Below the pieces are notes generated by a model, which saw only the letters and a list, made by a program, of their open reading frames with translations, was not told the origin of the DNA and made no database searches. This document shows positions 51,039-51,653 of a stretch of DNA of 64,000 bases, in pieces. Every line of letters starts with the position of its first letter. Positions within the stretch are counted from its first letter, which is position 1. A program made the position numbers and the translations under genes. The stretch is taken from positions 124,001 to 188,000 of the IMG/VR virus record IMGVR_UViG_3300010938_000951, one strand, 5' to 3'.

Positions 51039-51056
51039 TTGGATATATAAGTCACT

Positions 51057-51653
51057 ATGAGCTATCTATAGAACCATCTAATCAGGCAAATGAAAAGCTG
51101 TCCACAGACAGACAGCCAATCCGTGTATGAACACGGCGTCTCTGTTAAAGAGCATATTTTTGAATTAATTTCATTCTTGAAAACCGGAAAGATTCCTGAA
51201 GGTTGGCGATTACCCGACTGGATGAGTGAGTATCGAGAGCAGTTGTTAGCCTCCTTACTTCCAGACGATATTATCAAAGCCTACGCAGTCTTCCACGATT
51301 GTGGCAAGCCCTATTGTATCACTATTGATGAACAGGGCAGAAGGCATTTTCCTGACCACCCTGAAATATCCCATAATGTTTGGCTGTATGTTAGCAATAA
51401 CAAAACGATAGCTAAGCTAATTCTTATGGATATGAAAATTCATACTATGAAGGCAGTAGATGTTGATGAATTCTGTCAGCATCGAGAAGCCACTACTCTC
51501 CTGCTTGCAGGATTAGCTGAAGTACATAGTAATGCAAAGATGTTTGGCGGCATTGATTCTGAATCCTTCAAAATCAAATGGAGCCAAATTAATAAACGCG
51601 GTAAAGCAATTTGCCGCAAATTATTTGGAGATAAACATGTGTCTATAGGTTAA
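51057..51653 (+). CDS. HD-domain phosphohydrolase with in-frame TAG at codon 5 (predicted readthrough; ATG 51090 is the alternative start)
   Basis: EHG, FHDCGKP, HFPDHPEIS; GATATATA leaderless motif 15 nt before ATG 51057. Confidence 0.75.

What the first reader, a model, noticed from the sequence alone, without database searches (positions are those of the whole stretch)
51042..51653. HD-domain gene: promoter geometry places the true start upstream of an amber codon
GATATATA at 51042 lies exactly 15 nt before ATG 51057, the same spacing as at 53178/53193, 55351/55366 and 55831/55846. Leaderless mRNAs must start at the 5' AUG, which forces the ribosome across TAG at codon 5. The downstream ATG 51090 has only a weak AGG and no clear SD. 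The H..HD.GKP...H.xH pattern resembles the HD domain of tRNA nucleotidyltransferases.
Basis: partly seen in the sequence, partly recalled or inferred. Interest (0 to 1): 0.75.

Follow-up and report, generated by a model that had tools for sequence, protein, structure and literature searches.

The report
Amber-gated tRNA-repair genes in jumbo phage
Two neighbouring phage genes for enzymes that probably act on tRNA ends (an HD-type hydrolase and a Pth2-type peptidyl-tRNA hydrolase) each carry a conserved UAG stop codon a few codons after their start, and the phage encodes two amber-suppressor tRNAs 1 kb downstream, which points to the long-missing targets of the suppressor tRNAs found in many jumbo phages.

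Summary
GATATATA (51042-51049) lies 7 nt before ATG 51057, as it does at three other genes in the window, and TAG 51069 is codon 5, in frame with the HD ORF (51090-51653).

The main inference holds: the gene starts upstream of the amber codon. In 16 of 23 non-redundant HD homologues an ATG, 1-4 sense codons and a TAG precede the domain in frame. These include the cultured phages XacN1, Xoo-sp13, RAS14 and RsoM2USA. The peptide between TAG and the Met (N-x-L-I-x-D/Q-M) is conserved through synonymous codon changes. The SD or promoter always sits before the upstream ATG. RAS14 has no downstream ATG at all.

- The next gene, a Pth2-like hydrolase, has the same design: SD, ATG 51637, TGT CTA, TAG 51646.
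- Two tRNA(CUA) genes lie at 52544-52617 and 52628-52700.
- In 70 non-redundant Pth2-like loci, the early TAG co-occurs with a tRNA(CUA) within 4 kb (43/8/4/15, p=1.4e-6).

The contig does not recode TAG generally. Best explanation: translation of a tRNA-end enzyme pair depends on the suppressor tRNA. The purpose, probably autoregulation or timing, is inferred. I found no description of this in the literature searched.

The parts
51042..51049 (+). GATATATA promoter-like (-10-type) element, 7 nt before ATG 51057
   Evidence: The motif and its 7-nt spacing are kept in relatives L005, L007, L008, L010 and L020 while the spacer letters vary. In the contig the strand bias is 18:1, and 5 of 18 copies have ATG at +15 (p=5e-5).
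51057..51059 (+). Inferred true start codon of the HD gene. It has no SD and fits a leaderless or 1-2-nt-leader mRNA.
   Evidence: An in-frame ATG lies 1-4 codons before the TAG in 16 non-redundant homologues. It is preceded by an SD in the SD-led relatives and by GATATAT[AG] in the close ones. A contig from run X12 begins at 51055.
51069..51071 (+). In-frame amber codon (codon 5) of the HD gene, followed by A
   Evidence: TAG is kept at this place in relatives of 38-89% identity while the flanking codons change. The base after TAG is A in 15 of 16 HD gates.
51072..51089 (+). Six codons (N-H-L-I-R-Q) of the N-terminal helix, translated only if TAG is read through
   Evidence: The peptide pattern N/D-x-L-I-x-D/Q-M is conserved, with Leu encoded by CTA, TTA, TTG, CTC, CTG or CTT and Ile by ATC, ATT or ATA. 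It is also present in homologues that have no TAG (L019, L022, ME3, Arash, fHe-Yen9-04).
51090..51653 (+). HD-type phosphohydrolase domain ORF (187 aa from the internal Met; stop TAA 51651-51653)
   Evidence: phrog_14850 at E=6e-59. Invariant H, HD, GKP, H, D and H residues. Model pLDDT 86. Best profile and fold matches are to the HD-like domain of CC-adding and A-adding tRNA nucleotidyltransferases.
51627..51630 (+). GGAG Shine-Dalgarno, 6 nt before ATG 51637
   Evidence: Read directly from the sequence.
51637..51648 (+). Start of the Pth2-like gene: ATG TGT CTA, then amber codon TAG at 51646-51648 (codon 4)
   Evidence: There is no ATG, GTG or TTG between the TAG and TTG 51691. The same ATG plus 1-5 codons plus TAG design is found in 51 of 70 non-redundant homologous loci.
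51649..51987 (+). Pth2-like peptidyl-tRNA hydrolase coding sequence after the amber codon (112 aa plus stop)
   Evidence: Pfam PF01981 scores 32.9 bits against a cut-off of 23, aligned from residue 6. The profile hits M. jannaschii Pth2 (2zv3) at E=1e-10, with residue 6 aligned to Pth2 residue 2. A start at TTG 51691 would remove the first strand, KLYVITRADL.
51984..52537 (+). Two small ORFs (79 and 105 aa) of unknown function between the gated genes and the suppressor tRNAs
   Evidence: No Pfam or PHROG match. The second ORF is absent in one relative's contig (joint 52192>52514).
52544..52617 (+). tRNA(CUA) number 1: amber suppressor with C1-G72, G73 and an encoded CCA
   Evidence: ARAGORN. 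Rfam tRNA, 47.1 bits.
52628..52700 (+). tRNA(CUA) number 2: amber suppressor with G1-C72 and A73, unrelated in sequence to number 1
   Evidence: ARAGORN. Rfam tRNA, 62.5 bits.

Best explanation
**Shown or strongly supported**

The HD gene starts at ATG 51057, right behind a GATATATA promoter element, probably on a leaderless mRNA. Codon 5 is UAG. The gene for the Pth2-like peptidyl-tRNA hydrolase overlaps the end of the HD gene and is built the same way: GGAG, ATG 51637, two codons, then UAG.

No further GATATATA lies before 53178, so both genes and the two amber-suppressor tRNA(CUA) genes (52544-52700) are probably one transcription unit. Full-length HD and Pth2-like proteins are made only when a ribosome that has formed a 3- or 4-residue peptide meets a charged tRNA(CUA) at the UAG instead of release factor 1. 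Otherwise it releases a tiny peptide at almost no cost.

The UAG is followed by A or G. In E. coli that context favours suppression and weakens termination (from my own knowledge of Bossi 1983 and Poole 1995).

Support for this reading:
- the gate is conserved;
- the gate is specific to these two gene families;
- it is linked to tRNA(CUA);
- the contig shows no general TAG recoding.

**Inferred**

Both enzymes act on the 3' end of tRNA. They are fused into one protein in XacN1, Xoo-sp13 and RAS14.

My preferred reading of the purpose is a feedback or dosage loop, like prfB or infC. Synthesis of a hydrolase that can attack acylated tRNA ends would depend on a dedicated reporter aminoacyl-tRNA that competes with RF1. 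Output would then be limited by, and tuned to, the state of the tRNA pool. A simple time delay, in which the enzymes appear only once phage tRNAs have accumulated, is the main alternative purpose.

Which amino acid is inserted seems not to matter. The tRNA(CUA) genes of different phages have unrelated acceptor stems and discriminator bases.
For: **The gate in the window**
- Anatomy of both gates.
- Two bona fide tRNA(CUA) genes 0.9 kb downstream.

**HD gene**
- 16 of 23 non-redundant homologues have ATG plus 1-4 codons plus TAG in frame.
- The peptide after the TAG is conserved through synonymous changes, and it is present in TAG-less homologues.
- The SD or the promoter motif always precedes the upstream ATG. 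No SD precedes the internal Met in relatives.
- RAS14 has Leu in place of the internal Met.

**Pth2-like gene**
- The Pfam and PDB alignments start before the first available canonical start codon.
- 51 of 70 non-redundant loci carry the gate.
- Gate against tRNA(CUA) within 4 kb: 43 with both, 8 with the gate only, 4 with the tRNA only, 15 with neither (Fisher p=1.4e-6).

**Specificity**
- In the fetched loci, gated ORFs on the + strand number 84 for TAG against 23 for TAA and 13 for TGA. The excess is almost all Pth2 or HD.
- The contig shows no general TAG recoding.
- TAG ends only 12 of 311 ORFs of 100 codons or more on the + strand.

**Breadth**
- Cultured phages with the gate also have a tRNA(CUA): XacN1, RsoM2USA, RAS14, ME3, Arash.
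- fHe-Yen9-04 has an internal TAG in its HD gene and a tRNA(CUA) 2.5 kb away.

**Other**
- The base after TAG is A in 57, G in 12, C in 2 and T in 0 of 71 gates.
- HD and Pth2 are fused in XacN1 and RAS14.
- The XacN1 authors could not find targets for its suppressor tRNAs.
Against: - There is no direct evidence of read-through: no peptide spanning the UAG and no ribosome profiling.
- The transcription start is not mapped. The one supporting contig (X12, begins at 51055) comes from a relative, in a run the tool marks as probably DNA. Another contig (X11) runs on upstream into a tRNA.
- The internal Met is invariant in 16 of 17 HD homologues. Three cultured-phage annotations start there. A shorter isoform made by reinitiation therefore cannot be excluded.
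- 8 gated loci have no tRNA(CUA) within 4 kb, and several loci have the tRNA but no gate.
- The loci are related, so the Fisher p value overstates independence.
- In mycobacteriophages the TAG sits between a start codon and a well-placed GTG, so no read-through is needed there.
- The contig is estimated to be 62% complete, so statements about the whole genome cover 267 kb only.
- The proposed purpose (feedback or timer) is untested.
- The HD-Pth2 complex prediction gave no answer.
Confidence: 0.75

Rival explanations
1. The HD protein starts at ATG 51090. The upstream ATG-AGC-TAT-CTA-TAG is a 4-codon leader mini-ORF. Its translation and termination deliver ribosomes to the nearby AUG by termination-reinitiation, or merely regulate it. 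UAG is read as stop.
For: - The Met at 51090 is invariant in 16 of 17 homologues.
- The annotations of RsoM2USA, Xoo-sp13 and XacN1 start at the equivalent Met.
- tblastn and PHROG matches begin at that Met.
- The distance from the stop to the AUG is short, 18 nt.
Against: - The six codons between the TAG and the Met evolve like protein: Leu and Ile are kept through synonymous changes. They match the N-terminal helix of homologues that have no TAG.
- RAS14 has no Met there.
- The Pth2-like gene has no start codon after its TAG for 14 codons, and it would lose its first strand.
- The codon after the TAG in HD genes is AAC, AAT or ACC, never a start codon.
- This rival does not explain the linkage to tRNA(CUA).
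Confidence: 0.12
2. [quoted passage not shown] The phage tRNA(CUA) genes serve another purpose, for example reading through host stop codons.
For: - 8 of 51 gated loci lack a tRNA(CUA) within 4 kb.
- In XacN1, RAS14 and RsoM2USA the tRNA lies far from the gene.
- UAG followed by A is a leaky context (own knowledge).
Against: - Gate and tRNA(CUA) co-occur strongly and are usually adjacent. The tRNA often lies directly behind the Pth2 gene, 350-470 nt from the start of the match.
- Every cultured phage with the gate that I checked has a tRNA(CUA) somewhere.
- No other candidate target genes were found.
Confidence: 0.06
3. The phage uses genetic code 15 (TAG is a sense codon) throughout, and these two TAGs are just two of many.
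For: - Suppressor tRNAs are present.
- TAG is rare as a terminator.
- This kind of recoding is known in crAss-like and Lak phages.
Against: - Coding density under code 11 is already about 1.0, and making TAG a sense codon gains less than doing the same with TGA or TAA.
- Only 6 pairs of same-frame ORFs on the + strand are split by a TAG, against 43 by TAA and 27 by TGA. Those 6 translate to noise.
- Early-TAG candidates are no more frequent than TAA or TGA ones in the contig.
Confidence: 0.03
4. The in-frame ATG...TAG is a chance arrangement, a sequencing error or a decaying gene.
For: Across the contig, an ATG within 10 codons upstream of an in-frame stop is about as common for TAG (14 of 98) as for TGA (22 of 139) or TAA (17 of 188).
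Against: The arrangement is conserved in dozens of independent assemblies and in cultured phages, across 38-95% protein identity and in two different gene families.
Confidence: 0.01

Closest known systems
Stop-codon recoding in phages with suppressor tRNAs (TAG read as Gln, code 15, in crAss-like and Lak phages; Borges et al., bioRxiv 10.1101/2021.08.26.457843; Peters et al., PMC9523058)
   Same: A phage-encoded tRNA(CUA) decodes in-frame UAG in phage genes while the host uses the standard code. TAG is depleted as a terminator. A regulatory role has been proposed.
   Different: There, dozens of genes are recoded at many internal positions, mainly late, structural and lysis genes, and coding density under code 11 collapses. 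Here only two gene families are affected. Each has one UAG, within the first 2-6 codons, and the rest of the contig uses the standard code.
Autoregulatory recoding of translation-factor genes: prfB (in-frame UGA at codon 26, +1 frameshift, senses RF2) and infC (AUU start, senses IF3). From established knowledge; prfB is also covered in PMC13245932.
   Same: A gene of the translation apparatus carries, early in its own reading frame, a signal whose decoding depends on the state of the translation apparatus.
   Different: In prfB the product itself reads the signal. No frameshift is involved.
Archaeal and eukaryotic peptidyl-tRNA hydrolase Pth2 (PF01981; PDB 2zv3, 1wn2, 1q7s). It has been noted in jumbo phages by Iyer et al. 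2021 (PMC7824862).
   Same: The neighbouring gene passes the Pfam cut-off and aligns over the whole Pth2 fold.
   Different: It is a phage subfamily with its own motifs (KLYVITRxDL, G-Y-Q-x-V-Q-S-x-H, F-x-E-P-D-I-D-N-Q). It carries an amber codon at codon 3-5, lies next to a tRNA(CUA), and is fused to the HD domain in some phages. None of this is mentioned in PMC7824862.
HD domain of class II tRNA nucleotidyltransferases: A. aeolicus CC-adding enzyme (3wfo-3wfs, O67911) and D. radiodurans A-adding enzyme (Q9RV39). In the E. coli CCA-adding enzyme the HD domain has 2',3'-cyclic phosphodiesterase and phosphatase activity (own knowledge, Yakunin 2004).
   Same: They share the fHD-GKP motif and the helical HD fold. 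These are the best profile and fold matches.
   Different: This is a stand-alone 198-aa protein with no nucleotidyltransferase head. The similarity is weak (16% identity; E 0.004-0.1; TM 0.55-0.62). Pfam HD does not reach its threshold.
Lambda bar minigenes and pth (own knowledge): 2-3-codon mini-ORFs that provoke peptidyl-tRNA drop-off and are toxic when Pth is limiting.
   Same: If the UAG is not suppressed, a 3-5-codon ORF ending in a stop lies at the head of a peptidyl-tRNA hydrolase gene.
   Different: Nothing here shows drop-off or toxicity. The mini-ORF is in frame with, and continuous with, the enzyme's coding sequence.

Membership tests
HD-superfamily metal-dependent phosphohydrolase | Conserved H...HD...D metal-binding motif | tested here: met
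   H15, H69-D70, H90 and D114 (plus H86 and H118) are invariant or nearly so in 17 homologues.
HD-superfamily metal-dependent phosphohydrolase | Match to Pfam PF01966 above its gathering score | tested here: not met
   The window's protein has no Pfam hit at E<=0.01. Only 2 of 12 homologues hit PF01966, with a best E of 0.0011.
HD domain of class II tRNA nucleotidyltransferases | Fold and sequence similarity to that domain in particular | tested here: inconclusive
   It is the best PDB profile hit (3wfo-3wfs, E=0.004). It is also the best Foldseek hit (3wfq, 3wfo, O67911, Q9RV39; TM by query 0.55-0.62; E 0.02-0.1; probability 1.0). GlnD HD domains score nearly as well.
HD domain of class II tRNA nucleotidyltransferases | Phosphoesterase activity on tRNA 3' ends | not testable with these tools
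   This needs an enzyme assay.
Pth2 peptidyl-tRNA hydrolase (PF01981), neighbouring gene | Pfam match above the cut-off over the whole domain | tested here: met
   32.9 bits against a cut-off of 23, covering profile positions 2-104 of 115. The profile hits 2zv3 at E=1e-10.
Pth2 peptidyl-tRNA hydrolase (PF01981), neighbouring gene | Catalytic residues and hydrolysis of peptidyl-tRNA | tested here: inconclusive
   The invariant D81 and T87 align with the D-x-G-x-T region of Pth2. I did not map them residue by residue onto a solved active site. Activity cannot be tested here.
Phage stop-codon reassignment (code 15) | In-frame TAG in conserved coding sequence, plus a phage tRNA(CUA) | tested here: met
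Phage stop-codon reassignment (code 15) | Many genes recoded; low coding density under the standard code | tested here: not met
   Only the HD and Pth2-like genes carry the TAG.
Leaderless mRNA | A promoter -10 element at a fixed 6-7 nt from the AUG, and no SD | tested here: met
Leaderless mRNA | A mapped 5' end at the A of the AUG | tested here: inconclusive
   One contig from run X12 (a relative; possibly DNA) begins at 51055, with depth 30 against about 5 upstream. A contig from X11 runs on upstream.
Autoregulatory recoding (prfB-like logic) | The gene product changes the decoding of its own in-frame signal | not tested
   This is inference only. It rests on both enzymes being tRNA-3'-end enzymes and on the Pth2-tRNA(CUA) pairing persisting even without the gate.

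The most novel reading that the evidence does not exclude
A widespread self-contained translational circuit exists in large phages, from mycobacteriophages to jumbo and huge phages. In it, a dedicated amber-suppressor tRNA exists mainly to gate one or two tRNA-3'-end enzymes (Pth2-like and HD) through a start-proximal UAG. The enzymes in turn act on acylated tRNA, including the suppressor. The result is a homeostat that reads the charged-tRNA to RF1 balance of the infected cell. This would explain the orphan suppressor tRNAs of standard-code phages and would be a new class of tRNA-based gene regulation.
Probability: 0.3. Interest if true: 0.9.

Novelty: new variant of a known kind. Interest (0 to 1): 0.8.

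Why it matters
**An open question gets candidate answers.** Suppressor tRNAs with anticodon CUA are annotated in many standard-code jumbo phages, and their targets have been unknown. The XacN1 paper states that none could be identified. The RsoM2USA paper only speculates. The likely reason is that people looked downstream of annotated stop codons. These targets have their UAG in the first few codons, so gene callers start the gene after it or truncate it. Examples are the 50-aa 'peptidyl-tRNA hydrolase' of Arash, RAS14, and the split genes g408/g409 of fHe-Yen9-04.

**What the finding provides:**
- It names specific candidate targets.
- It corrects the N-termini of two widespread phage protein families.
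- It links Pth2, an HD hydrolase and tRNA(CUA) into one module.
- It suggests a compact natural design for suppressor-dependent gene control.

**It is directly testable.** Several cultured phage-host pairs carry the gate.

Tried and rejected
**Rejected explanations**
- Genome-wide TAG reassignment. ORF statistics under altered stop sets, same-frame ORF pairs split by one stop, and early-stop scans showed no excess of TAG outside the two genes.
- A shared TCTATAG motif at both gates. Its frequency is at chance level (8 found, 8.8 expected), and it is not conserved in relatives.

**Searches that found nothing**
- A release-factor gene in the contig.
- A near-identical phage record.
- Sigma-70-type promoter and terminator scans added nothing decisive.
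- Seven literature searches found no description of start-proximal amber codons in Pth2 or HD genes.

**Inconclusive or failed steps**
- RNA evidence for the transcription start. Only contigs of relatives from metatranscriptome or 'RNA-Seq' runs were available. They are suggestive (a contig begins at 51055) but not decisive.
- HD-Pth2 complex prediction returned no answer, so it counts neither for nor against.
- Amino-acid identity of the suppressors. Similarity to the phage's other tRNAs is low and ambiguous. Across phages the acceptor stems and discriminator bases differ widely. I therefore make no assignment.
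Full report
**1. What the window is.** The window is bases 124001-188000 of a single 266,899-bp virus contig. IMG/VR's completeness estimate is 62%. Near-identical sequence occurs only in soil, groundwater and wastewater metagenomes. Genes lie almost entirely on the + strand: 212 against 30 ORFs of 150 codons or more. The contig carries 65 tRNA genes. Around the finding lie a tRNA-Thr cluster, an M23 peptidase, the HD gene, a Pth2-like gene, two small ORFs, two tRNA(CUA) genes, an HNH endonuclease and an IF3 homologue. The nearest cultured relatives at protein level are jumbo phages of Ralstonia, Xanthomonas, Stenotrophomonas, Tenacibaculum, Acinetobacter and the GAP32/Eneladusvirus group.

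- The same octamer plus 7 nt plus ATG occurs at 53178, 55351 and 55831.
- The count of the octamer is not above chance, but its placement is. In the contig it occurs 18 times on the + strand and once on the - strand.
- 5 of 18 copies have ATG exactly at +15 (p=5e-5). For GATATATN it is 9 of 42 (p=5e-7).
- Seven of these ATGs open ORFs of 53-245 codons with no room for a Shine-Dalgarno.
- In relatives the motif and a 6-7-nt spacing are kept at the HD gene and at the gene homologous to 53193, while the spacer letters change.

This is what a -10-type promoter that produces leaderless or 1-2-nt-leader mRNAs would look like. A contig from run X12 (a relative; labelled RNA-Seq but flagged as possibly DNA) begins at 51055 with depth 30, against about 5 just upstream. 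A contig from X11 continues upstream into a tRNA. The transcription start therefore remains unproven.

**3. Does the gene really start before the amber codon?** Comparative evidence says yes. I fetched 18 IMG/VR loci with HD homologues and nine GenBank phage regions.

- 16 of 23 non-redundant homologues (38-89% identity) have an ATG, 1-4 sense codons and a TAG in frame, 4-10 codons before the conserved Met.
- The codons between TAG and Met encode a conserved N/D-x-L-I-x-D/Q-M segment. Its Leu is written CTA, TTA, TTG, CTC, CTG or CTT and its Ile ATC, ATT or ATA, which is the signature of selection on a protein.
- The same segment is the N-terminus of homologues that have no TAG: L019, L022, ME3, Arash and fHe-Yen9-04.
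- In relatives that use an SD, the SD sits before the upstream ATG. In the six close relatives without an SD, the GATATAT[AG] motif does. None has an SD before the internal Met.
- Stenotrophomonas phage RAS14 has Leu in place of the internal Met, and its annotation is truncated as a result.
- The annotations of XacN1, Xoo-sp13 and RsoM2USA start at the internal Met, which hides the feature.

**4.

*The next gene is built the same way.* GGAG lies at 51627-51630, then ATG 51637, TGT, CTA, TAG 51646, then GTT AAA GAA GGC GAT AAG CTT TAT GTT ATT. The sequence after the TAG is a Pth2-type peptidyl-tRNA hydrolase: Pfam PF01981 scores 32.9 bits against a cut-off of 23, and the profile hits PDB 2zv3 at E=1e-10. 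Both alignments begin at residue 6 after the TAG. The first canonical start codon after the TAG is TTG 51691, 14 codons later, which would delete the first beta strand.

*Two tRNA genes with anticodon CUA lie at 52544-52617 and 52628-52700.* Both were found by ARAGORN and pass Rfam tRNA at 47 and 62 bits. They are on the same strand, and no further GATATATA lies before 53178, so they are probably co-transcribed with the two genes.

**5. How general is it?**

- A profile of the Pth2-like protein retrieved 80 IMG/VR loci, of which 70 are non-redundant.
- 51 of the 70 have ATG plus 1-5 codons plus TAG directly before the domain. At most a handful have a canonical start between the TAG and the domain.
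- 43 of those 51 have a tRNA(CUA) within 4 kb, often directly behind the gene.
- Of the 19 loci without the gate, 15 have no such tRNA (Fisher p=1.4e-6). The loci are related, so this p value is generous.
- A blind scan of all fetched loci for gated ORFs found 84 with TAG on the + strand, against 23 with TAA and 13 with TGA. There were 17-20 of each stop on the - strand. The excess is almost entirely Pth2-like or HD genes.

The gate is also present in these records:
- the Pth2-like genes of Acinetobacter phage ME3 (MT*IHENKK) and Salmonella phage Arash (ML*NKHW; annotated as a 50-aa fragment), each with a tRNA(CUA) nearby;
- the huge-phage assemblies LR756500, LR756501 and LR756504;
- phage-like contigs binned into MAGs.

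In Yersinia phage fHe-Yen9-04 and its relatives the HD gene has an internal TAG and is annotated as two genes. A tRNA(CUA) lies 2.5 kb away.

In XacN1, Xoo-sp13 and RAS14 the HD and Pth2 domains are fused into one gated protein. That ties the two enzymes to one function.

**6. Is it general recoding?** No.

- Coding density under code 11 is already about 1. Freeing TAG adds less than freeing TGA or TAA.
- Same-frame ORF pairs split by a TAG are rare, and their translations look like noise.
- Early-stop candidates are no more frequent for TAG than for TAA or TGA across the contig.
- TAG is avoided as a terminator: it ends 12 of 311 long + strand ORFs.

**7. Mechanism.**

*Supported by conservation.* Translation starts at the upstream ATG and must pass a UAG at codon 3-6.

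*Inferred from linkage.* The decoder is the phage tRNA(CUA), competing with RF1.

- The base after the UAG is A in 57 and G in 12 of 71 distinct gates, and never T. In E. coli that context is reported to favour suppression and weaken termination (own knowledge).
- Placing the stop at the very start means that a failed read-through costs only a 2-5-residue peptide.
- The suppressor tRNAs of different phages have unrelated acceptor stems and discriminator bases. Several are Gln-like (U1-A72, G73). The window's two are C1-G72/G73 and G1-C72/A73. The inserted residue is therefore probably unimportant, which fits its position in an unconserved N-terminal tail.

*The enzymes.*
- The HD model is confident (pLDDT 86).
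- Its best matches are the HD-like domain of CC-adding and A-adding tRNA nucleotidyltransferases, followed by GlnD HD domains. Pfam HD is below threshold.
- The partner is a Pth2. Both enzyme types work on the 3' end of tRNA.

*Purpose (inference).*
- My preferred reading is a dosage or feedback loop of the prfB/infC kind. A hydrolase that could damage acylated tRNA would be made only in proportion to a dedicated charged reporter tRNA.
- The main alternative is a timer that delays the enzymes until phage tRNAs accumulate.
- The Pth2-tRNA(CUA) pairing persists in some loci that have a plain ATG start (L063, L106, L131, L132). That suggests the enzyme and the tRNA are functionally linked beyond the gate.

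**8. Known or new?**
- Phage suppressor tRNAs and TAG recoding of many late genes are known.
- Pth2 in jumbo phages has been noted.
- The XacN1 authors explicitly failed to find targets for its two tRNA(CUA) genes. The RsoM2USA paper only speculates.
- Seven full-text searches found no description of start-proximal amber codons in these genes. The library is incomplete, so prior description elsewhere cannot be excluded.
- I rate it a new variant of a known kind: gene-specific, start-proximal, tRNA-gated read-through.

**9. Limits.**
- There is no direct evidence for read-through or for the transcription start.
- A short isoform starting at the internal Met is not excluded.
- In mycobacteriophages (Myrna gp84, IkeLoa gp151) the pattern is start codon, TAG, then GTG, with the SD placed for the GTG. 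Read-through is not required there, although a tRNA(CUA) follows the gene.
- The HD-Pth2 complex prediction gave no answer.

Noticed in passing
window 54725-55264: A complete phage-encoded IF3 homologue (Pfam IF3_N E=1.6e-32, IF3_C E=1.9e-26). It sits among genes with leaderless-type promoters. In E. coli, IF3 discriminates against leaderless mRNAs (own knowledge), so the combination is curious.
   Followed up: no
window 53178-53195, 55351-55368, 55831-55848; contig 48479, 159336, 200301, 222680: A class of at least seven genes starts 7 nt after GATATAT[AT] with no SD, which makes them likely leaderless mRNAs. In relatives the spacing is 6-7 nt.
   Followed up: partly
L038 (Yersinia phage fHe-Yen9-04) 2462-3028: The HD homologue has an internal in-frame TAG (ELDSG*GDS) and is annotated as two genes, g408 and g409. 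The same split appears in the related Erwinia, Serratia, Pectobacterium and Cronobacter jumbo phages, where two or three hypothetical proteins lie under the match. A tRNA(CUA) lies 2.5 kb downstream.
   Followed up: partly
L122 (Mycobacterium phage Myrna) 1474-1482; L123 (IkeLoa) 1474-1482: In cluster C mycobacteriophages the Pth2 gene is preceded by GTG-TAG-GTG or ATG-TAG-GTG and followed by a tRNA(CUA). The Myrna record labels that tRNA as tRNA-Ser. The SD is placed for the GTG after the TAG, so it is unclear whether the gate operates there.
   Followed up: partly
L076 4001 region; L127 (LR745208) 4411-4487: One relative has TAA instead of TAG at the gate position (M-A-TAA-N-K-L-Y). Another has a tRNA with anticodon UUA directly behind a Pth2-like gene that has no gate. 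Together these may be an ochre version of the system.
   Followed up: no
L071 1936, L081 1715, L103 3249: These Pth2-like genes have the gate, but their reading frame runs on into an HNH-endonuclease-like sequence after about 25 residues. This suggests an inserted homing element or intein in the gene.
   Followed up: no
L007 1861-2217, L008 1934-2283, L009 1741-2093, L031 826-1177: Several relatives carry a tmRNA gene between the tRNA-Thr cluster and the HD/Pth2/tRNA(CUA) module. The window has none at that place.
   Followed up: no
window 49300-49377; contig 41327-41403 and 43345-43419: ARAGORN cannot assign a normal anticodon to these tRNA-like genes. It reports 2- or 4-base anticodons: cg, ttaa and tttt.
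   Followed up: no
L041 (Salmonella phage Arash) 3464-3538: A tRNA annotated as tRNA-Phe in the record is read by ARAGORN as anticodon CUA. The adjacent 'peptidyl-tRNA hydrolase' gp84c is annotated as only 50 aa, because the caller could not pass the early TAG.
   Followed up: partly
window 52470-52863: In the wastewater run X12 the summed contig depth over the two tRNA(CUA) genes is 164-201, against about 30 over the HD and Pth2 genes. Contigs of other organisms' tRNAs may contribute, so I draw no conclusion from it.
   Followed up: no
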